This document shows positions 891-55,920 of a DNA stretch of 64,000 nucleotides, one piece after another. Both the position numbers and the translations under genes were made by a program. Location of the stretch: positions 186,001-250,000 of the forward strand of contig NW_025765780.1 of the NCBI RefSeq assembly GCF_003918875.1, read 5' to 3'. Positions within the stretch are counted from its first letter, which is position 1. The number at the start of each line of letters is the position of its first letter. This DNA comes from Haliotis rubra (lineage: Eukaryota). Under the pieces are notes generated by a model. That model was not told where the DNA came from, did not search any database, and worked only from the letters and a program-made list of their open reading frames with translations.

Positions 891-2770
891 AGTACTGTAG
901 TGTCACAGTGTAGCTAATGAAGGATCCCATATCGTACTGTAGTGTCAGTGTAGCTAATGAAGGATCCCAAATCGTACTGTAGAGTCACAGTGTAGCTAAT
1001 GAAGGATCGCATATCGTACTGTAGTGTCAGTGTAGCTAATGAAGGATCGCATATCGTACTGTAGTGTCACAGGGCAGCTAATGAAGGATCGCATATCGTA
1101 CTGTAGTGTCAGTGTAGCTAATGAGGGATCGCATATCGTACTGTGGTGTGGCAGTGTAGCTAATGAAGGATCGCATATCGCACTATAGTGTGGCAGTGTA
1201 GCTAATGAGGGATCGCATATCGTACTGTGGTGTGGCAGTGTAGCTAATGAAGGATCGCATATCGTACTGTAGTGTGGCAGTGTAGCTAATGAAGGATCGC
1301 ATATCGCACTGTGGTGTGGCAGTGTAGCTAATGAAGGATCGCATATCGTACTGTAGTGTCACAGTGTAGCTAATGAAGGATCGCATATCGTACTGTAGTG
1401 TCAGTGTAGCTAATGAGGGATCGCATATCGTACTGTGGTGTGGCAGTGTAGCTAATGAAGGATCGCATATCGTACTGTGGTGTGGCAGTGTAGCTAATGA
1501 AGGATCGCATATCGTACTGTAGTGTCAGCGTAGCTAATGAAGGATCGCATATCGCACTGTGGTGTGGCAGTGTAGCTAATGAAGGATCGCATATCGTACT
1601 GTAGTGTCAGCGTAGCTAATGAGGGATCGCATATCGTACTGTAGTGTCACAGTGTAGCTAATGAAGGATCGCATATCGTACTGTAGTGTCACAGGGCAGC
1701 TAATGAAGGATCGCATATTGTACTGTAGTGTCACAGGGCAGCTAATGAAGGATCGCATATCGTACTGTAGTGTCAGTGTAGCTAATGAGGGATTGCATAT
1801 CGTACTGTGGTGTGGCAGTGTAGCTAATGAAGGATCGCATATCGCACTATAGTGTGGCAGTGTAGCTAATGAAGGATCGCATATCGTACTGTGGTGTGGC
1901 AGTGTAGCTAATGAAGGATCGCATATCGCACTATAGTGTGGCAGTGTAGCTAATGAGGGATCGCATATCGTACTGTGGTGTGGCAGTGTAGCTAATGAAG
2001 GATCGCATATCGTACTGTAGTGTCAGCGTAGCTAATGAAGGATCGCATATCGTACTGTGGTGTCGGCAGCGTAGCTAGCTAATGAAGGATCGCATATCGT
2101 ACTGTGGTGTGGCAGTGTAGCTAATGAAGGATCGCATATCGTACTGTAGTGTCAGCGTAGCTAATGAAGGATCGCATATCGCACTGTGGTGTGGCAGTGT
2201 AGCTAATGAAGGATCGCATATCGTACTGTAGTGTCAGCGTAGCTAATGAAGGATCGCATATCGCACTGTGGTGTGGCAGTGTAGCTAATGAAGGATCGCA
2301 TATCGTACTGTAGTGTCAGCGTAGCTAATGAAGGAACGCATATCGCACTGTGGTGTGGCAGTGTAGCTAATGAAGGATCGCATATCGTACTGTGGTGTGG
2401 CAGCGTAGCTAATGAAGGATCGCATATCGTACTGTGGTGTGGCAGTGTAGCTAATGAAGGATCGCATATCGTACTGTAGTGTCAGTGTAGCTAATGAAGG
2501 ATCGCATATCGTACTGTGGTGTGGCAGTGTAGCTAATGAAGGATCGCATATCGTACTGTAGTGTCAGTGTAGCTAATGAAGGATCGCATATCGCACTGTA
2601 GAGTCACAGGGTAGCTAATGAAGGATCGCATATCGCACTGTGGTGTGGCAGTGTAGCTAATGAGGGATCGCATATCGTACTGTAGTGTCACAGTGTAGCT
2701 AATGAAGGATCGCATATCGTACTGTGGTGTGGCAGTGTAGGTAATGAAGGATCACGCTGAGTACTGTAGT
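891..2770. repeat. Minisatellite, 38-40 bp unit (GTGTAGCTAATGAAGGATCGCATATCGTACTGTAGTGTCA and variants)
   Basis: Directly visible tandem array with interspersed unit variants (…GTAGTGTCA, …GTAGTGTCACA, …GTGGTGTGGCA). The short ORFs here are repeat translations. Confidence 0.97.
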
Positions 2771-3603
2771 GGAATAGTTCTTTCTAAAACTGACTTGGCC
2801 TTGTGTTATAAGATCATATCCCTCTGAAAAACGTTTTAATCGCGCATTAAGGGTACTTGTAAATAACTCAATTATGTTATAGCTCTATACGAATTTGGGT
2901 CAGACTGGTCACCTTTATTTCTATAAATTGATTTTATTGCAAGTGTTAACAAACATTCAGGGTTAATAGCTTCGTCTATAGTTGATGTCATTGTTCAGAA
3001 TGCTGCAGTCATGTGCCTTCCTGTCAAAACTACACTCTTTAAAATCATCTGCACCTTGTTTAGGGGTTCCCTCTTTTTGTTGAAAAAGTCAAAGTAGCTA
3101 GGAATGTCCTGTGATGTTTTCTGTTGTACTTTGTGTTGTCAATGTTCCCCCCAATTCTTTGGGCAAGTGTAATTAATGTTTTTTTCAAAATACGTCTGTT
3201 AGATAATTATCATAATTTCTAATATGCTTGCCCATGACGTTTGGTTAGCTTTTGACTGTAAAGCTATTTTTCTTAAAGCAACGTTTAGCCTTGTTGAACG
3301 TTTTTCTAACCTATGCGCATGAACATTGCCTAAATAGAAAAGATATTCTGCAGATTTTAATCCACTGAACCATGCAATGTACGACGAGAAGGAGTACACT
3401 CAGGTCTGTAGTAGGACATTATGACTAGTAGTTATGAGATTAAACATAAATACTTATGGAAGCGAATAAGGGAACACATGAAAATACAGGTGTTCCTTTA
3501 TTGTTTTCCAGGTTTCTTCACAATGTATGTATTGCACTGCGAGTGCAATTATGGAAATAAAGGAATACTTGTACTTTCATGTGTTCATTTATTCATTTCC
3601 ATT

Positions 3604-4471
3604 AGTATATTACTGTGGTTGATTGGTGTAACTAGTGAAAGATATATACGTAGTAGGCAGTATATTACTGTGGTTGATTGGTGTAACTAGTGAAAGATAT
3701 ATACGTAGTAGGCAGTATATTACTGTGGTTGATTGGTGTAACTAGTGCAGTATATTAAGATGAAAGATATATACGTAGTAGGCAGTATATTACTGTGGTT
3801 GATTGGTGTAACTAGTGAAAGATATATACGTAGTAGGCAGTATATTACTGTGGTTGATTGGTGTAACTAGTGAAAGATATATACGTAGTAGGCAGTATAT
3901 TACTGTGGTTGATTGGTGTAACTAGTGAAAGATATATACGTAGTAGGCAGTATATTACTGTGGTGGATTGGTGTAACTAGTGAAAGATATACACGTAGTA
4001 GGCAGTATATTACTGTGGTTGATTGGTGTAACTAGTGAAAGATATATATGTAGTAGGCAGTATATTACTGTGGTTGATTGGTGTAACTAGTGAAAGATAT
4101 ATACTGTGGTAGTAGGCAGTATATTACTGTGGTTGATTGGTGTAACTAGTGAAAGATATATACGTAGTATATTACTGTGGTTGAGGCAGTATATTACTGT
4201 GGTTGATTGGTGGTTGATTAACTAGTAGTAGTGAAAGATATATACGTAGTAGGCAGTATATTACTGTGGTTGATTGGTGTAACTAGTGAAAGATATATAC
4301 GTAGTAGGCAGTATATTACTGTGGTTGATTGGTGTAACTAGTGAAAGATATACACGTAGTAGGCTGTATATTACTGTGGTTGATTGGTGTAACTAGTGAA
4401 AGATATACACGTAGTAGGCAGTATATTACTGTGGTTGATTGGTGTAACTAGTGAAAGATATCCACGTACTA
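3604..4471. repeat. Minisatellite, 55 bp unit (TATATTACTGTGGTTGATTGGTGTAACTAGTGAAAGATATATACGTAGTAGGCAG)
   Basis: Unit starts recur at 3606, 3661, 3716 and onward; a few units are scrambled near 4100-4230. Confidence 0.97.
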
Positions 4472-6069
4472 GGAGTAACTGGTTTCGCTTACTGTGTGCC
4501 ATGTGACGGGTTATGTTGGACACCAGTGCAGCGTCTGTGTACTGTATAGTCTCTATCCCAACTCAACCGTCACTCAAGTGGAAATACAACCCTGTGGCTG
4601 TTTATGTTGATCCTACAAAAATAACCACATTGCACACGTTGTTGATTGTGTGATACTACCTTTTATCTTGACGTTGTAAATCAGTAAAATAATTATGTTT
4701 GTTACTTCCTTTTTATGGCATACAGCCTGCTTAGGAACAATGCATCACCTGCTGCCCTCGGTCGAATTCCGCGCAGTCAATGGCTATCAGTGATTAATCC
4801 CCTGTGTAGACAACTGAAGGCATCATCAAAGTTGTTACCAGTTATTGGCATAAGTTGAGGAGACGGCAATGAAAGCAAACAGAAAAAGTCAGTAATGCGA
4901 TTGAAAATCCAAGGTGGAAGCGTTAAGACCGGGCTCCGCCCCTAACATTGAAACTGCGCATCACACTAACACATGAAACCCGATTTAATCCCGGAGAGGA
5001 TTTTTTCTTTGGATGGCGATTTAGTCTATCATATTTTGTTGCCTGTTTTACGCGATTTTGGTCTTGTTTTGTGAACAAGCAAGCCTTTAGCAGTAAAACA
5101 TGTGTACTCAGTATGTAGTCCTCTGCTGAATGTCGTGAAAACGATAGTTATATATGTGATAGTTGTTTAGCGTTCACATTGTGGTGAATGTGTACCTGAG
5201 TTACGTTCATTGTTGGAAGATAGCGATTCTAAATTCAATTAACGCATAAAGTGTTTGGACCATTTCCACGATAATGAATGACTGACGGCTGACCGGGCAC
5301 GGGAGCCATTATGGTGTTATTGATCCTCTATAAGTGGCTCGGACAGAGAACAATGTTCACATATTTCTATTGTTTGTTGGATTGAAAAAACGCAACGTTT
5401 CAATAAATATCGACGGCGCAGAATGTTTTCAAATATTTCAAAATTTATCTTTGCTGTTGAAAACACATTATCGCATTTATTGGTGCACAAAACATGATCT
5501 TTTAATCAATTTCTAAATACTGTTCAAACAAAAACATATTATCGTCTGTATTTCAAAGTTGCATAGAAAGGTAGTCAATCAATGTCAAGTAGCAATTGTG
5601 AGTATAGCGACTTTCCTTGTTGGTGGCTATTTCTGACGTGTTTCATGGCCGAGATTTACAGCTTGCTGACATGGAAGAGTTCACACCGATGGACGGAAAT
5701 GTATTGTGAACGAGCAGGATTTATTTCCCGCACCCACGGGTTCAGGGGGTCATATCACACTCAGTTAAAACTTAGTGTTTTCAAACATTGTTTTCCCCTG
5801 AAATGTAAAATTGATTATTTGCAAATAATCAGCATGACGGAATCGACATGACTTGTCTTTTGCACTTCAAAACTGTACCGATAACCTACGCCACAGGCAT
5901 TGGGTTCCTACACCATAGGCATTGGGTTCCTACACCATAGGCATTGGGTTGATATTGCTTCCTTGCCATAGGAGACATAAAGTACGTGATCAAGACTATC
6001 AGTGGTGGAAAAAGGCATGGTGATTGAGGGGGTTGAATCGCTCACATTCTGTGTTGGCCTTAGAGATTA

Positions 6070-6140
6070 GAATGAATGAATGAATGAATGAATGAATGAA
6101 TGAATATCTCTATTCCCTCTAGATTTCAATCCGAACATCA
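6070..6140 (-). mobile_element. 3' terminus of a LINE-like element with (TTCA)n tail
   Basis: (GAAT)n followed by …TTCCCTCTAGATTTCAATCCGAACATC; a near-identical junction occurs at 34150-34225. Confidence 0.55.
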
Positions 6141-6973
6141 AATACATATATATATATATATATACATCAAATATTCGCAACAACATACTCTCAAGGTGGG
6201 TACACACATCTACAGAGCTATATCATGCTATGGTTTGATATGGGAACTCAGGTACCCTCATAGATACCCTCAGGTACCCTCATAGGGAACGGTTCTGGAA
6301 GGGCAATTTAGACGATTAAGTAAAAAAGCCTGGGATGAAACCAGTATTAATTACCAACCCCTTATGAACCATAGTTCCTGTTTTTAACTATTAGATAACA
6401 TTCTGCAAGTGCTACTGTATGACAGAGATATAACTGTGGTGTATAGGAGAAACACCGTCTGCTGCACACAAGCTAACACGTTATTCAATTGTGCTCGTGA
6501 TATAAATTTTAATAATGTAACGTGATGCGTTTTATTTTTGATTGTCAAAATTAATGGTCTACTGTGATTTATCGACCTTCTTGAAAACCGTTAAAATCAA
6601 GAATGACACCCCATGCACGTATATTGGGCTACTACGCTGTGCACGCGCATTCCATGCTTTGTGTTTAGGGGTGGTGATAAAGAGAAACGGTGGTGCTTTC
6701 ATAAAACGTCTATCTTTGTAAAGTTTGTTAACGCTTATACTTCCTATCCAAATTGAAAGTTCAGGTTCCCCTACGTTTTTATGAGTATAGTAAGGATGGA
6801 ATTTAATTAAAGTAACTGAATTATGGATACTCTTGTCTGTGACTGAAACACGTTGTACATTGCACTAAACAGTAGGTCCTGTGCATGTAATTCCGTTCCG
6901 AGTAGATGATAATACATATTTTCTCAAGATATATCAGAGCAAGGATTTTATATGAAGTTACTTTAGTTCCCTC

Positions 6974-7090
6974 ACACTGCTATACACACACAACAATATT
7001 ATTCGGACACTGCTACACACACAACAATCGAACACTGCTACACATACAACAACAACCGAACACTGCTACACATACAACAACCGAACACTG

Positions 7091-7167
<77 letters not shown>

Positions 7168-9170
7168 TCTAACACTGCTATACGCACATAACAAACGAAC
7201 ACTGTTATACACACAACAATCGAACACTGCTCCAAACACTCAACAATCGAACACTGCTATACACACATAGCAAACGAGCAATGTTATACACACAAAAATG
7301 GAACATTTCTATACACACAACAATGGAACACTTCCATACACAGATACAAATCTGACACTGCTATACACACAAAATAATCGAACACTGATATACACACAAA
7401 ATAGTCTAACACTGCTATACACACCACCAATCAAACAGTGATACACACATTCGAGATATACTGCTATACACACACAACAATCGAACACTGCTATACACAG
7501 ACAACAGAACACTGTTATAAACACACAACAATCGGACACTACTATACACACAACAATCGAACACTGATATATACACAACAATCGAACACTACTATACTCA
7601 CAACAATCGAACACTGCTATACACACAACAATCGAACACTACTATACACACAACAATTGAACACTACTATACACACAACAATTGAACACTACTATAATCA
7701 CACAACAAGCTAAGACTGATATACACACAACAATCGAACACTACTATACACACAACTATCGAACGCTGATATACACAATAATCGAACACTCATGCTATAC
7801 ACACATCAATCGAACACTGATATACACACAATAATCGAACACTGATATACACACAATAATCGAACACTGATATACACACAACAATTGAACACTGCTATAA
7901 TCACACAACAATCGAACACTGATATACAAACAACAATCGAACACTACTATACTCACAACAGTTGAACACTGCTAGAATCACACAACAATTGAACACTGAT
8001 ATAGTCACAACAATCGAACACTACTTTACACACAACAATTGAACACTACTATAATCAGACAACAATCGAACACTGATAAACACACATCAATCGAACACTA
8101 CTATACACACAACAATCGAACACTGATATACACACAATAATCGAACACTACTATACTCACAACAATCGAACACTGATATACACACAATAATCGATCACTG
8201 CTATACACACAACAATTGAACACTGCTATAATCAGACAACAATCGAACACTGATAAACACACATCAATCGAACACTACTATACACACAACAATCGAACAC
8301 TGATATACACACAATAATCGAACACTACTATACTCACAACAATCGAACACTGATATACACACAATAATCGATCACTGCTATACACACAACAATCGAACTC
8401 CGCTATACACACAACAATCGAACACTACTATACACACAACAATTGAACACTACTATAATCACACAACCAATCACTGATATACACACATCAATCGATCACT
8501 TCTATACACACAACAATCGAACACTACTATACACACAACAACCGAACACTGATATACACACAATAATCGAACACTACTATACACACAACAATTGAACACT
8601 GCTATACTCACAACAATCGAACACTATTATACACACAATAATCGAACACTACTATACACACAACAATTGAATACTGCTATAATCAGACAACAATCGAACA
8701 CTGATAAACACACATCAATCGAACACTACTATACACACAACAATCGAACACTGCTATACACACAATAATCGAACACTGCTATACATGCAACAATTGAACA
8801 CTGCTATAATCACACAACAATCGAACACTGATATACAAACAACAATCGAACACTACTATACTCACAACAGTTGAACACTGCTATAATCACACAACAATTG
8901 AACACTGATATACATACAACAATCGAACACTACTATACACACAACAATTGAACACTACTATACACACAACAATTGAACACTGCTATAATCACACAACAAT
9001 CGAACACTACTATTCTCACAACAATCGAACACTACTATACACACAACAATCGAACACTGATATACACACAACAATTGAACACTGCTATAATCACACAACA
9101 AGCGAACACTACTATACTCACAACAATCGAACACTACTATTCTCACAACAATCGAACACTGCTATACATA
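6974..9170. repeat. Minisatellite, ~25-26 bp unit (CACACAACAATCGAACACTRMTATA) with embedded (CA)n at ~7093-7165
   Basis: Directly visible tandem array. The His/Thr-rich and Cys/Val-rich ORFs here are repeat artefacts. Confidence 0.96.
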
Positions 9171-48240: not shown

Positions 48241-49473
48241 ACTTCATACAGATTTAATCATGCAACCTTAACGCCCCATTCAGGTTACCATTTCTTTCGG
48301 TCAAATCGCCCCTCTTTCCATCAAACACTAAATGGCCTGGCGGGCCCGTGTCGGAAAGCGCACGCCAAATCTCCAAATCATCATCCTCACTGCAGAACTT
48401 CATTCTTGTGGTATAAGGTTCTACACTGATATGTGGCATCATAACTGAATAGAGAAGATGGCGTCCATAAAATATATCTGGGATTTTACTGTCATTTTGA
48501 GAATGATACCTCTCGCCAGTATCAGAATGATATGTTTCTTTTGAAGAAGTATTGTGAACTGCTCCAGCCTCTGTGCATCTGAACAAGTGGTGTCATTTTC
48601 CTTTCCATGATAGTTTTCTGTACATCAGTGGTGACCATGGCTTCATCCCTGCAGTCCCTGCAGAAGAGGACAACCTTACTGATCTATAACGCTGATGGCC
48701 CAGGTCACTAGAAATAATCACGGAAACACTCAGCTGAAACAACCAACTAATCAAGACAGTTTGAAACATTAAGCTCACAAATAGACTGAATAATTTTGTG
48801 GAAGCTGCGGTGTCCGAGTGGGTTACATGAATGACCAAGTGTTCTGGCGATTAGGCGCCTGAATCTGAGAGTGTGAGTTCGAATATACCGGATGGAACTC
48901 AACCCATCAACATTACTAGAATCTGTACTTTTCAGAGAAAGTGTAATCCCCAATATAGCTTGTGTTATAGATAATTCATATGTGTTCCCAATGTTCATTT
49001 ATTTCTTCGTTTGCCGTCATGCCTTGTATATTTTTAAATACGAATTAGTGGAGCACGCAAACTATAAAACCTCCAGGCGATCACCGATCAGTTGATCTGG
49101 ACACACGACTACACGCCAACAAACACACCCCTTCCCCAACACACATCCACACATTCGCATTGCACTATTAACCCCCACAACAGACACAGACAACCTGATC
49201 GATAGACAGACGTAATTACATGTCTTCAGTTAGCCACCTCAAGCATTTTGTGATATCACTACTATTGTTCCCCCACGATCCTGTAAACCCCGACCTGTGG
49301 ATACGTCAATGAAACTTTGTGTTTGGATCTGTTGCTTCAGGAAAATATATAATCTTAAGTGACTGTTACAGGGCCCTTTGATATCTAATATATCAAGTCA
49401 AGCCCATTGACGTAGTGAAGTCGTCATGTCGAACACATGTCTGGATACTTCCAGGGTGATGTAAACAAGCAAT

Positions 49474-52400
49474 TAGTCCCTGAGCCAGAACTTGAAAATA
49501 TAGAGTTGACTACCAAATTGTGGGCAAACAGCCACTGTGATTTTCATATAGCTCAAGGTATGTAGTTTATGGAATTACGTGATGGGTACCCCCCATGCCC
49601 AGCTATGTGGGTTTTTGGGCGGCCATTTTTAAAGATGGCCGCCATTTTCTTGAATCCGACTATCTGTCTACAAAAGCTGTGCTACAGCTAAAACTGTAAG
49701 CATTAGACATATAAATGTGGGTGAAATATGATCAGTATTCAATTTCCCACAGTTTGATATGTGACCTGTGAGGGTTCGGCATGATTTTTCTTTTAAATTG
49801 GGAAAAATGTATGACAAAATACGATTTCCCCCTAAAAATGCAGATAATTTGTTAATTTCTGGAAAAATAATGATAACAGAGAGGAGAACTTACATAATTT
49901 AGAACGCCTATGCCTCTAAGTATACATTTGTTCCATTTCATATTTAAATCTAAATTAAACTAGAATGTTAATCAGGTTTAGAACGCAGGTCCCATTTTTC
50001 ACTAAATAGTGTCCTTTCAGTACAAATTGACCATCACTCTCTGAAAACAATGACCAAGCTCAAATTGTAAGCTTGAAGTTAGGATAAAATATGTTCAGTA
50101 TGGATTTTTTTGATATGTAGTTTGTGTGGTTCAGCATGATTATTTTTTTTTAAATTGGGGAAGGTGTATGAAAAAATACGATTTCCCCCTAAAATGCAGA
50201 TGGTCTATTGCTCAAGATATCATCACAGGTGTCAGTATGGGGAAAACAGTTGACAGCAAAACACATACTACTTCCTGGGACTACCAAAACTCTCACAGGC
50301 AATATTGAATTAATGAAGATGAATAATTCTGGACATTCCAGTTCCTATTCAGCTTTAGAAGAAATTGATTAAGCATAAACAAACTCCAGCAAGTTTACTG
50401 TTTGGGCATTTGACAACATTGATAGACAAAAGGAAGTTCTATCTGGAGCAGGAACAACGCATCGTGTGAATGCAGTAATTGTCCAGCCACTAGCTATGTC
50501 ATGCACACACCCAAGACCTGTACCAATCATTCAACAAGAGAGTGAACAGGCGTAATATTTAGCCTTCTAACAAGCTTCTACCCATCTACACTGTTGGGAA
50601 AAAAGAAGTGACCCCCTCCCGTGAAACCTGATTCCAATCTTTCTCAAACTCTCCATAACTCAACCATCTCAGCACAACAACACAATCTGCTATGGATCCT
50701 TGATAGAAACTTTGAACCGTCTGATCAGGTGTTAAAGCCATGGACTGGCTTCAATATATTGTGTAGAGAGGAACCTGATGTGACAGCTGACAATTAAGGC
50801 AATTTACCTACAATCAATGCTCCAGCAACAGAAATCTCGACAGTGCAAGAGATTCTTCGACAGTCCATTGCTATTCAGACTCCGCTTGAGTTGCAGAAAC
50901 TTGCAGTGGTTTTGGATCAAGCTCTATTTGCAAAGGCTACTGAGACAGTATGGAGAGACAATGGACGCTTCAGAAAGGTTGTGCTAATGATGGGCAACTT
51001 TCACACAGTTTGGAATTTGATGTCAATTATTGGGAAGAAGTTTGGTGATGCTGGACCTTGCTGTAGAGTCAGAAATAGTTTCTGAAGGATCGATCAAGAA
51101 AGTATTGGAAGGCAAGCACTACAACCGAGCTGATGTGAAGATGTCTTCACAAACTTACTTATGAAGCAATGATGAGATATGATGAGATTGATTTGGCTGG
51201 TATTTGTGAAATTGCTTCAGCAAACATAGCCAAATATCCAACAACTTGACCTTTTCTTTGATGAGATATGTGAGCTCCATCAATGTTTAAGTCATGAAAC
51301 CCAAAGAGAAATGCCTTGAGAGCAGTTCCCGGATGGAAATCTGCAAATTGTTTTGCGCCCTGAAAGGTGACACCTCGCAGCTTTTTTGATGACCTATTTA
51401 AGATTTGGTTGAAATCTTGCTTGGGCTCATATGTGCAGATAGAGAAGACAATTGTTACATCCACCTCGCTTGTATTCGTGACTTGATACCTTGGTGCTTT
51501 GCCACAAACTATGACAAACTATGCAAGATACCTTCCTGTTTAAAATACACAGATGACTCGGCTCCAAGAAGCATCTCCAGAATTGCACAACCATGTTCAT
51601 AACAAAGGATTTTCAGTTCAGTTTAGCAATACAGATGCTTTAGGACAAATTGCTGTTGACCAAGCCACAGAGAAAACGGTAAACAAAGATACACAAATGG
51701 CCGGTGGATCTCCAGGCTTCAGCATGAAACCAGGAACCGTGTTTCGATACTACCTGACAGCAGAGCACAGAGCTACAGCCCTGCGGCAACGTCATCATGA
51801 AGTGTCTTTCAAATCGCTGTGCCATGCTGACCTGGATAAAACATGAACACAGGAGGACAAATGTGACGTCCAAACACTTGTTGACATTCTCTATAGTATT
51901 TGTTGGAAATCATATAGAACTGATATATATATATCATCAGGGATTGCGGATACATCTCACGTATCATTTGATCTTTTGACTGCACACCAGAAAGGACTAG
52001 ACACATACAACAAATTCCAGGATAAACTAGAGAAGGGGGGGGGGGGGAGGCTTTCATGACACAATGAAGAAACACAACTTGAAAACATTCACTGAAATGA
52101 AGAACAAATCACCAAAAGTTCCTGACAAACACATCGTGTGGAAAGCAGACGAGATAATTTGGAAATATGGGGCTAATTGCCCAAGACCGAAATGGAACAT
52201 GAGAAAAGTCCTCTGTCATCCTTTAGGACCATTGCAATGGTCAATGGCGAATGGTGATGAAACACTAAAAAGACCAACAAAGCCATGCTAGCAAGCCATC
52301 TTGAAAGCAAAGTATCTTCAGCTGAAACCACTCCAAAACAAAGAACTGCGCTTCTTGATGCCATGGCAATCCTCCAGAAGCTTCATGGCGACAACCATAC

Positions 52401-54379
52401 TGTAGATGAGATCTCGGATGCTGCTCTGTCACACATGCTGCGTGCTGGTGTAGACTGTACATGTCAGATGTTGTGTTTGATATTTACAGAGAGAAAACAA
52501 TTAGGTCTACAGAACGCAATATTCGCTGCTCAAGAGAAGGAATTTTGTTCACTAAAATAAAACCATAATCATTGTTTGTCACCTATGGCAATCATTGCAT
52601 CAATCTGACAAAAGATGAGCACCAAGTTGTTGAAGATCTTGAATGCAGCCATGAGGAAGCTGATACTCGATTAGCTTTATACATTAAACATGCCGCTGAA
52701 GACAATTCCACACTTTTTGTGTGTAGTGGATGATACTGATGTCTTGATCATATTTCTCATTCTGGCAACAATCAGCAGCAGCAAAGCCTTCATCAGACGT
52801 GGAACCAGAGCTCGTATCAGACTGGTGGATGTAAGCAAATTTGCTCCTGCTCTAGGGGTTGAGGTGTGTTGTGTTCTAGTTGGATTGCATGCATGGACCG
52901 GTTGTGACCCAGTAAGTGCTTTGTCTGTATAAAGAAATCTCAAGGCTTTGAAAATGATTCTCCAGTATCAAAGGTTTATGAGAGTATGTGTGGAACTTGG
53001 AAGCACCTGGAATCTGACAATGGAAAACTTTGATGAAGTTCAAGCTTTTCGCATGCCAGCTGTACTGTAGAAACGCCAAAGTAAATAGAGTCAAAGAACT
53101 TCGCTATCTCATGTTTCATTATAGAGAAGGTGATGCTGATTCAGGACAGTTGCCATCTTGTGTTGATGCTGTCCTCCGTCCAAACTATCAAGCAGCCATT
53201 TGGAGAAACAGTCTCGAGAGGAATACAAGCGTTCCACATTCCACAGATGGACATGGCTAGGAGAAGGATACCAGTGGGAATTTACTGTTCAGCAGTTGGC
53301 AGACTGCTCCGATATGTCAAATTGTAATGACAACCATGATGACAACAACAATAATGATGATGATAACTGCAGTGATGATGATGATAATGATGATGATGAT
53401 GATGATGATTATAGTCGTTAACCACTGGTGACAATCAGAAATATAAAATCAATGTGTAAGGCTTATTACATTGTAAACATCTCATTGACTCAAACCACTT
53501 GTTGTGATTTTGTGACGATTTGGTATTTAGAGAAAGGTATTTGGAAGGAAGCACAATCCATTGAAAAACATTTAAACTTTAAGACAGAACCATAATCATG
53601 TTTCTCTGTTCATCTCTCTAAACATAATGTTTGAATGTAATGTACAAAAATAAATTGTGTATGTCTAAGTTATTGGTATGTCTATTTTTGTAACATTTTT
53701 TCAAAATAAAAATATACAATGATGTACAAATCCTTGCAATTAGATATAAAAATGTGTGAAATTCAATACTGAACAGATTTTATCCTAACAGAACCTACTT
53801 CAAGCTTATAGTTTGACCTGGGTCATTGTTTTTAGAGGCTGATGGTCAAATTTGACTGAAAGGACGCCATTTAGTGAAGACTGGGACCTGCGTTATGAAC
53901 CTGATAAAAAGTATGTTTTAAATTAGATTTAAATATCAAATGGAACCAAATGTATACTTAGGCTTTCTAAATTATTTTAGTTCTCTCTGTTATCAATGTT
54001 TTCCAAGAAATTAACAAATTATCTGCATTTTTAGGGGAAAATCGTATTTTGTCATACATTTTTCCCAATTTTAAAAACAATAATCATGCCGAACCCTCAC
54101 AGATTACATATCAAAATATGGGAAATTGAATACTGATCATATTTCACCCCACATTTATATGTCTAATGCTTATAGTTTAAGCATAGATTTTTTACACAAA
54201 TGGTCAGATTCAAGAAAAGGGCGGCTTTCTATAAAAATGGCCGCCCAATACCCATTTAGCTGGGCATGTGGGATGTCCATCACGTGATTCCATAAACTAC
54301 ATACCTTAAGCTATATGAAAACCATAGTGGCTGTTTGCCCCACAATTTGGTAGTGAAATCTCATCTGGCTCATTGACTA
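49474..54379 (+). mobile_element. 4.9-kb DNA transposon with ~630-bp TIRs and 3-bp (AAT) flanking repeat; decayed large ORF (~50200-53280); superfamily unassigned
   Basis: 49474-~50107 is the inverted copy of ~53759-54379, with termini TAGTC…GACTA. ORF remnants FDNID, GAGTTH, PWTGFN, LPTINAP, DQALF, GNFH, HEEADTRL, DDTDV, LHAWTGCD and NYQAAIWR. Confidence 0.9.
53325..53410. repeat. (GAT)n/(AAC)n microsatellite at the 3' end of the transposon ORF
   Basis: Directly visible. Confidence 0.9.
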
Positions 54380-54859
54380 AATTAAAAATCACTGACTCCC
54401 GTGCTTGATGTTTGTCCCTACTCATCTAAGGTCTGTATTCCAGAAAGTGTTTAAGTAATATGAGATGCCTACACATTTGTTATTCTAAAGTTTTCTCAAA
54501 TAACACGAAATTCCTACTAGGAAATCCCACAAAGAAAACTGAAGGAGAACCTTTGCAATAAGACCTCACCGGAATATGACAACATTCTCAAACCTTCTCT
54601 GGTTCATGTTTTATGGGCCGGTTACATCACGTGTGCGCTGTTTGAAGCATGGCAGAGAGTCTTGTACTGTGGTGTCGGGTAGTGGAATGACACACTGTAT
54701 GACACATGTTTCTGGAACCTAAATTGCTGCAGATTGAACATTTTGGAATTGTAGTCCTATCTTCCCGAGGGACATATATTTGCTGCAGATTATCAGGCTA
54801 TCTAAAGTTTAGACTTAGCTCACCATAACGTTTAGGCGCAATGACCTATTATATGTTAT

Positions 54860-55920
54860 ATACTCTGCAAAAAACGTAACGAAAAAGTAGTTTACAGATG
54901 TATAATTAATGTATGATATAATTAATAAACAGATCATTGTAAATTGTTCAGCTATCATGAGTTAAGTCATTTGCGAGTCCCCTGTTCTCAATATCAGAGT
55001 CAAGAACTGCCTGGTATAGTCGCCCTATGGAATCAGTCAGATTACGAATTGTGTGAAGGGGAATGATCAACCACTCTTCCTGCAACGCTTGTGCCAACTG
55101 GTGGAGGTTCCCAGATATGTTCGATGAGGTTTAGATCTGGAGACCTTAGTGCTTTCATTTTCGATTCCTTAGAAACGCCGTTGTCAGTCTTGCCTTGGGC
55201 GTCAAGTGTTGTGTTGAAGCATTATATGTGTTTGTTGCATAATGGGAAGGGCTTCTGGACGAAAAGCTTCATCTGTGCAACGTTGTGCCATTAATTTGCC
55301 CTGTACGTGTAGCACGCGTGTTCTACCTGTCGGTAAGATGGCGGCCCAAATCGTCACCAAATCTGAGACAGTTCTTGAATGCAGTTTTGAATATAACGTT
55401 CCCCACAACCACTGTAAACACACGACCCATAACTAAACAAAACAAGTCCCCGTCGCTGTTGTGGCCATACTCTGTGTCTTTGACACCATTGGCGTCAAAG
55501 ACGACGATGCTGATCTGGATCCCGGATCTGGGTAGGTTGTTAACGTGATGGTGCTTGGCGATACGTGGAACAACCTGACTACGACCGCAACCAAGTCGCC
55601 TGTCTTCAGTCGACCGAAGGTGTTGTTGCATTGAGCTTCTGTCAGTTTTGGCATGCTTCCACTTTCGATTTGCGATACTGTGATGACAGACAAATACAAA
55701 TAGAAATCTATCGTTTCCATAGCCCAACAATTCATGTTGCACGGGTTAACTGAGTCTCACGAATGTCTAAGGTGGTCGAAGTGAACTTCTTCAAAGATAA
55801 CGCGTTGGGATACTTTATCAGTAACACGAAAGCATACGGTATACTATAAATGAAACATTGGATACTCTACTTTCAGGAACTCTACTTGTTACTACCGTTG
55901 CCCCTTTTGATGAACATATC
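54860..55920 (-). mobile_element. Highly decayed Tc1-type element
   Basis: MPKLTEAQ… start at ~55654, PRSG linker, LQHNT and PDLNLIEHIW remnants. Boundaries approximate. Confidence 0.75.

What the first reader, a model, noticed from the sequence alone, without database searches (positions are those of the whole stretch)
49474..54379. Long-TIR DNA transposon whose ORF fuses a transposase-like region to a FEN1/XPG-like nuclease region
Seen: ~630-bp TIRs with TAGTC…GACTA ends, AAT on both flanks, and an intronless decayed ORF of roughly 3 kb. The N-terminal half has acidic/His motifs (DNID 50412, GAGTTH, DQAL 50915, GNFH 50993). The C-terminal half has HEEADTRL (52650), DDTDV (52729) and LHAWTGCD (~52885). 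Known: the ordered triad EAD…DxD…GxD is the metal-binding signature of FEN1/XPG/5'-nuclease-fold enzymes. Inference: the element couples a putative strand-transfer domain with its own flap-type nuclease. This architecture and terminus/TSD pattern fit none of Tc1 (TA), hAT (8 bp), piggyBac (TTAA) or classical CACTA ends. I have seen similar motif sets in uncharacterised invertebrate proteins but cannot assign a superfamily. This is the best candidate for a poorly described system in the window.
Basis: partly seen in the sequence, partly recalled or inferred. Interest (0 to 1): 0.7.

Follow-up and report, generated by a model that had tools for sequence, protein, structure and literature searches.

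The report
Decayed Academ (AcademX) DNA transposon copy

Summary
Window 49474-54379 is a 4.9-kb element with ~630-bp terminal inverted repeats, TAGTC...GACTA ends and an AAT/AAT target-site duplication. Its ORF is broken by at least 13 stops and 7 frame changes. Eight of nine copy pairs, across four related families in this genome, have perfect 3-bp duplications.

The two-domain reading also holds. Intact paralogues (1195-1619 aa) align with both halves of the broken ORF. AlphaFold models of the closest one have pLDDT of about 91.
- The N-terminal half is an RNase H-like DDE transposase with a helical insertion. Its best structural match is the P-element transposase (Z 10.1).
- The C-terminal half is a FEN1/EXO1/XPG/XRN-type 5' nuclease (Z 9-12). 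All seven acidic residues and the gateway Lys/Arg are conserved.

It is not an unassigned system. The literature describes the AcademX lineage of Academ as nuclease-encoding with 3-4-bp duplications. Of about 49 curated bivalve Academ-1 consensus sequences, 45 start with TAG and 13 with TAGTCC, the same terminus as here.

The window copy lacks the N-terminal ~390 residues and the C-terminal CXC tail, so it is a dead, probably non-autonomous derivative. Minor new points:
- Academ is abundant and partly intact in this genome, which earlier scan notes call abalone.
- Pfam DUF6589 appears to be the Academ transposase core.

The parts
49471..49473 (.). Left target-site duplication, AAT
   Evidence: matches 54380-54382
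49474..50108 (+). Left terminal inverted repeat. The terminus is TAGTCCCTGAGCCAGA. Near the tip it carries 13-14 nt that the right end lacks.
49617..49645 (.). Palindromic GGCGGCCAT / ATGGCCGCC motif pair inside the left TIR. A mirror copy lies at 54219-54245. Candidate protein-binding site.
   Evidence: (D4)
50108..50201 (+). Partial internal duplication of a TIR segment (copy of about 49753-49837)
   Evidence: D2, D9, I6, I11, I13
50241..53275 (+). Decayed ORF with at least 13 in-frame stops and at least 7 frame changes. It is collinear with residues ~391-1472 of 1554-aa intact relatives.
50241..51900 (+). Transposase core (RNase H-like DDE). First D is in DNID at 50412, second D in DQAL at 50915, E in DQATE at 51658. 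GNFH is at 50993. The helical insertion domain lies between the second D and E.
52300..53275 (+). FEN1/XPG/EXO1-like 5'-nuclease domain. Acidic motifs: LLDAM 52351, VVFD 52470, EEAD 52653, DDTD 52729, TGCD 52897.
53336..53415 (+). Asp/Asn-rich low-complexity tail (GAT/AAT repeats). It sits where full-length relatives have the Cys-rich CXC domain.
   Evidence: (D1)
53759..54379 (-). Right terminal inverted repeat. On the minus strand the terminus reads TAGTCAATGAGCCAGA.
54380..54382 (.). Right target-site duplication, AAT

Best explanation
Window 49474-54379 is an old, dead copy of an Academ-superfamily DNA transposon of the nuclease-encoding lineage (AcademX in Kojima's terms, DNA/Academ-1 in RepeatMasker style). 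Full-length members encode one protein of about 1550 aa with four parts: an N-terminal Cys/His-rich region presumed to bind DNA, an RNase H-like DDE transposase core with a large helical insertion, a FEN1/XPG/EXO1-type 5' nuclease, and a C-terminal CXC cysteine cluster. Shown here: the element structure, the 3-bp TSD, both folds, and the conservation of the catalytic residues. Inferred: the DDE core nicks the 3' ends at the TAGTCC termini and joins them to target DNA with a 3-bp stagger. Also inferred: the built-in structure-specific 5' nuclease cuts the other (5', non-transferred) strand or the branched junction. This would supply in cis the second-strand cleavage that other transposons achieve by hairpin formation or with a separate nuclease such as TnsA in Tn7. 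The window family has lost the N-terminal ~390 residues and the CXC tail. Its copies are ~80% alike, so it was probably a non-autonomous derivative moved in trans long ago.
For: Element anatomy and 3-bp TSD. TSDs were AAT, TAT, TTT, AGT and TAA, with one TAT/TAG mismatch. Three intact paralogous elements in the same genome share TAGTCC termini and 3-bp TSDs: L060 TAA, L059 TTA, L058 CAT. Both halves of the window ORF align collinearly to intact 1195-1619-aa ORFs and to ~1550-aa proteins from amphioxus, corals, a sea spider, fish and molluscs. Nuclease half: the model has pLDDT 91.8. Foldseek top hits are all XRN1/2, FEN1, EXO1, GEN1, XPG, T5 D15 or T4 RNase H, at probability about 1.0. In VIA-align the top 17 chains are all 5' nucleases (Z 12.3-6.9), then a drop to about 6. 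The family profile hits only human EXO1 in PDB sequences, on the VFD..K..R and GCD..GxGK motifs. D45, D86, K94, R101, D188, D212, D214 and D270 are invariant in 78 sequences. Transposase half: the model has pLDDT 90.9 with RNase H topology, and D141, D305 and E561 are invariant. The best structural match is P-element transposase at Z 10.1 over 365 residues, followed by ISCth4, Hermes, Tn5, RAG1 and integrases. Academ assignment: AcademX encodes a nuclease and makes 3-4-bp TSDs. Of about 49 curated Academ-1 consensus sequences, 45 start TAG, 21 TAGTC, 13 TAGTCC and 1 TAGTCCATG. Curated Academ elements average 5565 bp.
Against: No named Academ protein or profile (Repbase, or the Yuan & Wessler alignment) could be compared directly. 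Kojima 2020 and Yuan & Wessler 2011 are not held. Protein-level membership therefore rests on architecture, TSD and termini. Pfam's XPG_N and XPG_I models do not hit any member, so 'XPG-like' rests on fold and motifs. The structures were predicted for the paralogue L058 (30-52% identical to the window pieces) and not for the broken window ORF itself. The role of the nuclease in transposition is pure inference; nothing here shows which strand it cuts.
Confidence: 0.88

Rival explanations
1. The element belongs to a new, undescribed superfamily of DNA transposons that independently fused a DDE transposase to a flap nuclease.
For: Pfam gives no significant family for the window pieces or for the intact paralogues L058-L061. 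Database homologues are all 'hypothetical'. No reference Academ protein could be aligned here.
Against: The defining combination is already published for AcademX: a nuclease in the transposase ORF plus 3-4-bp TSDs. Curated Academ-1 consensus sequences share the TAGTC(C) terminus. The size range also fits.
Confidence: 0.05
2. It is a divergent member of the P-element superfamily, whose transposase is the best structural match.
For: Drosophila P-element transposase is the top VIA-align hit (Z 10.1, 365 residues aligned). It also has the best TM-score among the Foldseek transposase hits.
Against: The TSD is 3 bp here, whereas the P superfamily makes 8 bp (established knowledge). No THAP or P-element Pfam domain is found. 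Sequence identity in the structural alignment is 9%. P transposases are not known to carry an XPG-type nuclease.
Confidence: 0.03
3. Same family, different job for the nuclease. It does not cut the donor's second strand. It acts after strand transfer, trimming 5' flaps or resolving the branched intermediate or gap during repair, or it degrades nucleic acid 5'-to-3' as XRN does.
For: The highest structural scores are to XRN1/XRN2 and EXO1, which are processive 5' exonucleases, and not to XPG itself. FEN-type enzymes act on 5' flaps and junctions (established knowledge).
Against: Nothing here discriminates between the two roles. The Z-scores for XRN1, EXO1, GEN1, FEN1 and XPG all lie within about 3 units.
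Confidence: 0.35
4. The ORF is a domesticated host gene and not a transposon gene.
For: Many homologues in databases are annotated as ordinary uncharacterised proteins.
Against: The window copy is bounded by TIRs and a TSD, is multi-copy and is riddled with stops. The intact paralogues also sit between TIRs that are 97-100% identical, with TSDs.
Confidence: 0.01

Closest known systems
Academ superfamily, AcademX lineage (RepeatMasker class DNA/Academ-1): Kapitonov & Jurka 2010; Kojima 2020
   Same: Shared features are a single ORF joining a DDE transposase to an XPG-type nuclease, 3-bp TSDs, 5'-TAGTC(C) termini as in curated bivalve Academ-1 consensus sequences, a multi-kb size and an animal distribution.
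   Different: The window family is a truncated derivative. It lacks the N-terminal ~390 residues and the CXC tail, and it has unusually long (~630-bp) TIRs. The host is a gastropod, whereas a recent survey found Academ almost confined to bivalves among molluscs.
Drosophila P-element transposase (PDB 6p5a)
   Same: [quoted passage not shown]
   Different: P makes 8-bp TSDs and has a THAP DNA-binding domain and a GTP-binding insertion domain (established knowledge). None of these is found here. Sequence identity is 9%.
FEN1 / EXO1 / GEN1 / XPG (Rad2 family) and XRN1/2 5' nucleases
   Same: The fold matches (Z 9-12). The ordered carboxylates are D, D, E-x-D, D-x-D, D. The gateway Lys and Arg lie 8 and 15 residues after the second Asp. 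A GxGK helix-turn-helix follows the last Asp.
   Different: The domain is too divergent for Pfam XPG_N/XPG_I. It is fused to a transposase and is not a free repair enzyme. Its substrate is unknown.
Tn7 TnsA/TnsB two-nuclease transposase
   Same: The logic is analogous by inference: a DDE enzyme for the 3' ends and a second, unrelated nuclease for the 5' strand (Tn7 described in PMC3627910).
   Different: TnsA is a restriction-enzyme-fold protein encoded separately. Here the second nuclease has a FEN/PIN-like fold and is fused in cis. The role is untested.
AcademH lineage
   Same: It belongs to the same superfamily according to the literature.
   Different: AcademH encodes a helicase in place of the nuclease and makes 9-10-bp TSDs. 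No helicase is present in the elements studied here.

Membership tests
Academ (AcademX / Academ-1) | DDE (RNase H-like) transposase | tested here: met
   The model has pLDDT 90.9 with RNase H topology. D141, D305 and E561 are invariant. Structural hits are DDE transposases.
Academ (AcademX / Academ-1) | XPG-type nuclease encoded with the transposase | tested here: met
   The two halves are collinear in one ORF in the window copy and in intact relatives. The 5'-nuclease fold is supported.
Academ (AcademX / Academ-1) | 3-4-bp target-site duplication | tested here: met
   Eight of nine pairs have perfect 3-bp TSDs.
Academ (AcademX / Academ-1) | Termini like named Academ references | tested here: met
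   Of about 49 curated '#DNA/Academ-1' consensus sequences, 45 start TAG, 36 TAGT, 21 TAGTC, 13 TAGTCC and 1 TAGTCCATG. The window element has TAGTCC / TAGTCA.
Academ (AcademX / Academ-1) | Significant protein similarity to reference Academ transposases (Repbase, Yuan & Wessler profile) | not testable with these tools
   No reference protein or profile is available, and the key papers are not held. Indirect evidence only: the core resembles Pfam DUF6589.
FEN1/XPG/EXO1 5'-nuclease superfamily | PIN-like 5'-nuclease fold with helical gateway and H2TH/H3TH | tested here: met
   Foldseek probability is about 1.0 for FEN1, EXO1, XPG, GEN1 and XRN. VIA Z is 12.3-8.2 for 15 such chains.
FEN1/XPG/EXO1 5'-nuclease superfamily | Seven ordered active-site carboxylates plus gateway Lys/Arg | tested here: met
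   D45, D86, K94, R101, D188, D212, D214 and D270 are invariant, and E185/E186 are at least 90% conserved, in 78 sequences. All the motifs are legible in the window copy. VFD..K..R and GCD align to EXO1.
FEN1/XPG/EXO1 5'-nuclease superfamily | Match to Pfam XPG_N / XPG_I | tested here: not met
   No hit at E up to 0.1-1 in any of 32 members. I therefore call the domain XPG/FEN-like by fold and do not file it as a Pfam XPG member.
P element superfamily | 8-bp TSD; THAP domain | tested here: not met
   The TSD is 3 bp. There is no THAP or P-element Pfam hit.
CMC / EnSpm (CACTA) | CACTA-type termini; Transposase_21/23/24 domains | tested here: not met
   The termini are TAGTCC. No such Pfam hit was found.
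PIF/Harbinger | DDE_Tnp_4 transposase plus a second Myb-like ORF; TWA 3-bp TSD | tested here: not met
   There is no Pfam hit and the element has a single ORF. The TSDs include AGT, CAT and TTT.
hAT | 8-bp TSD; hAT dimerisation domain | tested here: not met
   The TSD is 3 bp. Hermes gives only a weak structural match (E 0.009, Z 7.0). No Pfam hit was found.

The most novel reading that the evidence does not exclude
AcademX transposases could be natural single-chain two-nuclease machines. In this reading the FEN/XPG-like domain makes the 5'-strand cut at the transposon end, playing the TnsA role in cis. This would be a way of liberating a eukaryotic DDE transposon that uses neither a hairpin nor a separate protein, and the 3-bp versus 9-10-bp TSD difference from AcademH would follow from the accessory enzyme. 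The apparently intact abalone elements described here (L059 and L060, with TIRs 97-100% identical) would make it testable.
Probability: 0.4. Interest if true: 0.6.

Novelty: new member of a known kind. Interest (0 to 1): 0.25.

Why it matters
For the scan, it removes a candidate 'unknown system': the transposase plus flap-nuclease fusion is the known AcademX architecture. Four things are still useful.

1. These are, as far as I could find, the first fold-level descriptions of both halves. The DDE core is P-element-like, and the 5' nuclease has a complete active site, though Pfam does not recognise it.

2. Pfam DUF6589 is probably the Academ transposase core. If so, thousands of 'hypothetical' animal and fungal proteins could be annotated.

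3. This genome, which earlier scan notes call abalone (a gastropod), carries many Academ families, some with intact ORFs and near-identical TIRs. A recent survey described Academ as almost restricted to bivalves among molluscs.

4. Those intact copies are natural material for testing what the fused nuclease does in transposition, which is still unknown.

Tried and rejected
- Pfam on ten stop-free pieces of the window ORF gave nothing usable. The only hit was DUF7701 at E 0.029.
- Pfam on four intact paralogues gave nothing.
- All seven sister copies of the window family that I fetched are as decayed as the window copy, so none could stand in as an intact ORF.
- The key papers (Kojima 2020, by DOI and by PMC id; Yuan & Wessler 2011) are not held. 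The first 'Academ' search was swamped by 'academic'. No paper pairs 'Academ' with 'XPG nuclease'. PMC5751038 has no held supplement.
- The C1946 copy with inverted identical flanks might have been a full-length master carrying the missing N-terminal region. It is not: homology again starts near residue 488.
- Cross-check that strong DUF6589 loci are AcademH, i.e. have a helicase nearby. There is no helicase in the 9-10 kb upstream. The result is inconclusive.
- Rejected superfamilies are CMC/EnSpm, PIF/Harbinger, hAT, P and Zisupton/KDZ, on TSD length, termini and absence of their Pfam domains.
- I did not run the large representative-protein search, because the claim does not rest on absence of relatives.
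Full report
**Observation.** The region 48500-55500 contains nine collinear inverted-repeat blocks that join 49474-50108 to 53759-54379 at 80-94% complementarity. These are TIRs of 635 and 621 bp. The left end starts with TAGTCC at 49474, preceded by AAT. On the minus strand the right end reads TAGTCA, ending at 54379, and is followed on the plus strand by AAT. Between the TIRs no frame stays open for more than about 100 codons.

**It is a repeat family with a 3-bp TSD.** The left TIR finds at least 52 matches in the 1.38-Gb genome at 76-87% identity. Aligning the ends shows a sharp boundary at TAGTCC(T/A)TGAGCCAGA in nearly all copies. The left-type end is 13-14 nt longer near the tip than the right-type end.

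TSDs for the six copies with both ends are below. Five of six are perfect, against a chance expectation of 1/64 each.

| Copy | Left / right flank |
|---|---|
| window | AAT / AAT |
| C2322 | TAT / TAT |
| C580 | TTT / TTT |
| C280 | AGT / AGT |
| C2811 | TAA / TAA |
| C598 | TAT / TAG |

All seven sister copies fetched are as decayed as the window copy. The family is old.

**The ORF and its intact relatives.** Pfam finds nothing in the stop-free pieces. A six-frame search of the genome with the piece carrying DDTDV...HAWTGCD finds 83 matches. Several lie in long open frames.

Four of these (L058-L061; 1195-1619 aa) were fetched. The window ORF aligns collinearly with them over both halves. 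Examples are L058 residues 166-1192 and P0002 residues 415-1484. The two-part architecture is therefore conserved and is not an accident of this copy.

A word search with L058 finds 228 proteins of typically about 1550 aa. They come from amphioxus, corals, a sea spider, fish and molluscs. All are 'hypothetical', and some are labelled Tesmin/TSO1-like CXC.

Relative to them, the window element covers only residues ~391-1472. The N-terminal Cys/His-rich region and the C-terminal CXC cluster are missing, and nothing in the TIRs or flanks encodes them. The copy has at least 13 in-frame stops and at least 7 frame changes.

**C-terminal half: a 5' nuclease.** In a 78-sequence alignment the invariant residues, in L058-segment numbering, are listed below. 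E185 and E186 are at least 90% conserved.

| Residue | Motif |
|---|---|
| D45 | IIDG |
| D86 | VVFD |
| K94, R101 | gateway Lys/Arg |
| D188 | EEAD |
| D212, D214 | DTD |
| D270 | GCD |

This is the order and spacing of the seven carboxylates and the gateway Lys/Arg of FEN1/EXO1. That comparison rests on established knowledge of the family (FEN1: D34, D86, K93, R100, E158, E160, D179, D181, D233).

A profile of the whole family hits only human EXO1 among 177,635 PDB sequences. The hit is weak (E 0.04) but lies exactly on VFD..K..R and on GCD..GxGK.

The AlphaFold model of L058:5530-6567 has pLDDT 91.8 and pTM 0.89. Foldseek's top hits are all XRN1/2, FEN1, EXO1, GEN1, XPG, T5 D15 or T4 RNase H, at probability about 1.0.

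The Foldseek-independent VIA search ranks 17 such nucleases first, then falls to Z of about 6 for unrelated folds. The leading scores are Xrn1 Z 12.3, EXO1 11.5, T5 exonuclease 10.2, GEN1 10.2, FEN1 9.4 and XPG 9.3.

Pfam XPG_N and XPG_I do not hit any member. I therefore call the domain XPG/FEN-like by fold and active site. All five acidic motifs are still legible in the window copy.

**N-terminal half: a DDE transposase.** The model of L058:3265-5382 has pLDDT 90.9 and pTM 0.91. Its topology is beta1-beta2-beta3-alpha-beta4-alpha-beta5-alpha, then an all-helical insertion (about 352-537), then a final helix.

The invariant residues map onto this fold as a classic DDE arrangement:
- D141 (DNID) lies on beta1.
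- D305 (DQAL) follows beta4.
- E561 (DQTxEE) lies on the final helix.

Foldseek matches are weak, but they are Hermes, P element, ISCth4, Transib and RAG1. VIA puts the P-element transposase first (Z 10.1, 365 residues aligned). ISCth4, Hermes, Tn5, RAG1, integrases and Argonaute PIWI domains follow.

The ESM Atlas places the core with DUF6589 clusters from Basidiomycota and Cnidaria: 28 of 30 hits, scores 0.96-0.97. Seven of 32 family members reach Pfam PF20231, and one is above the gathering score.

[quoted passage not shown] That is the combination found here.

A direct test was possible with the curated bivalve TE library of PMC10294476. Its held supplement contains about 49 consensus sequences headed '#DNA/Academ-1'.

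| First bases | Consensus sequences (of ~49) |
|---|---|
| TAG | 45 |
| TAGT | 36 |
| TAGTC | 21 |
| TAGTCC | 13 |
| TAGTCCA | 7 |
| TAGTCCATG | 1 |

The window family and three intact paralogous elements have the same terminus and a 3-bp TSD.

| Element | Terminus | TSD |
|---|---|---|
| window family | TAGTCC(T/A)TGAG | AAT (window copy) |
| L060 | TAGTCCATGGGC | TAA |
| L059 | TAGTCCAGGAGG | TTA |
| L058 | TAGTCCATGAGG | CAT |

Curated Academ elements average 5565 bp. The window copy is 4.9 kb and the intact elements are 6.9-7.1 kb.

I could not align a named Academ protein, because the reference papers and Repbase are not available here. That one membership feature remains untested. CMC/EnSpm, PIF/Harbinger, hAT and P fail on termini, TSD length or domains (see the membership table).

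**Mechanism.**
- Shown: a DDE core and a complete FEN-type active site, conserved across animal phyla in one polypeptide, and 3-bp staggered integration.
- Inferred: the DDE core makes the 3'-OH ends and carries out strand transfer. The fused structure-specific nuclease deals with the 5' strand, either by cutting it at the donor (a TnsA-like role, which I favour) or by trimming flaps or junctions after strand transfer. The structural scores do not separate these two roles: XRN, EXO1, GEN1, FEN1 and XPG are all within about 3 Z units.
- The window family lacks the presumed DNA-binding N-terminus. It was probably moved in trans.

**Context and novelty.** Earlier notes of this scan call the genome abalone. 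I did not verify this.

PMC10294476 reports Academ as almost restricted to bivalves among molluscs. Here the nuclease piece finds 83 loci. L059 and L060 have intact ORFs between TIRs that are 97-100% identical, and both families are multi-copy.

The finding is a new member of a known kind, not a new system.

**Limits.** The structures are of a paralogue 30-52% identical to the window pieces, because the tools take no read-through of the broken ORF. No reads tool was used.

Noticed in passing
L060 (G000:C2678:615000-624999) 1108-7965; L059 (G000:C2611:757000-766999) 1538-8667: Two full-length Academ-type elements have intact 1551- and 1619-aa ORFs and ~700-bp TIRs that are 97-100% identical. 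Their TSDs are TAA and TTA. Both families are multi-copy: L060 has copies at 92-98%, and L059 has at least 40 TIR matches at 89-94%. This suggests recent activity in a gastropod, although PMC10294476 describes Academ as nearly bivalve-restricted among molluscs.
   Followed up: partly
G000:C2610:27371-31460, C1295:16326-20374, C336:149473-152184, C1558:1048001-1052107, C2613:22464-26407: These ~4-kb deletion derivatives of the L060 family carry two nuclease-coding fragments head to head. The elements seem to be near-palindromes whose 'TIRs' include the 3' part of the ORF.
   Followed up: no
window 49617-49645 and 54219-54245; L059 1871-1885, 2262, 7924, 8301-8315: A palindromic GGCSGCCAT / ATGGCSGCC motif sits about 145-165 bp inside both TIRs of the window family. 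It is repeated in the TIRs of the otherwise different L059 family but is absent from L058 and L060. About 0.15 occurrences per strand are expected by chance in 64 kb. It may be a transposase-docking site or a promoter element.
   Followed up: partly
G000:C296:66219-67568, C1112:5017788-5019137, C2256:666940-668298, C1298:26962-28329: Pfam DUF6589 hits 43 other loci much more strongly (up to 146 bits), in ORFs of 573-844 aa without the nuclease half. These may be the helicase-encoding AcademH lineage. No helicase was seen in the upstream 9-10 kb, and the downstream side was not fetched.
   Followed up: partly
L003/L008 (G000:C1946:781781 and 788657); L028/L014 (G000:C547:164670 and 134059): Pairs of element ends in opposite orientation share at least 40 bp of the same flanking sequence beyond the TAGTCC terminus. 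This points to inverted segmental duplications, or to insertion into a palindromic repeat, and not to simple insertions.
   Followed up: partly
L035 (G000:C598:97100-106400) 1354-3581 and 5446-7444: The 8.8-kb copy of the window family is enlarged by a nested insertion with long ORFs, the longest 460 aa. It looks like a retrotransposon but was not scanned.
   Followed up: no
full-length relatives, e.g. P0001 residues 1-390 and the last ~80 residues: The N-terminal region has two Cys/His-rich modules, with consensus CIIH...YHRxCRSxFT and CIFCxKxKY...AHYHxSCY, that no Pfam model recognises. The C-terminus is a sub-threshold Tesmin/TSO1-like CXC cluster. Both are probably DNA-binding, and both are missing from the window family.
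   Followed up: no
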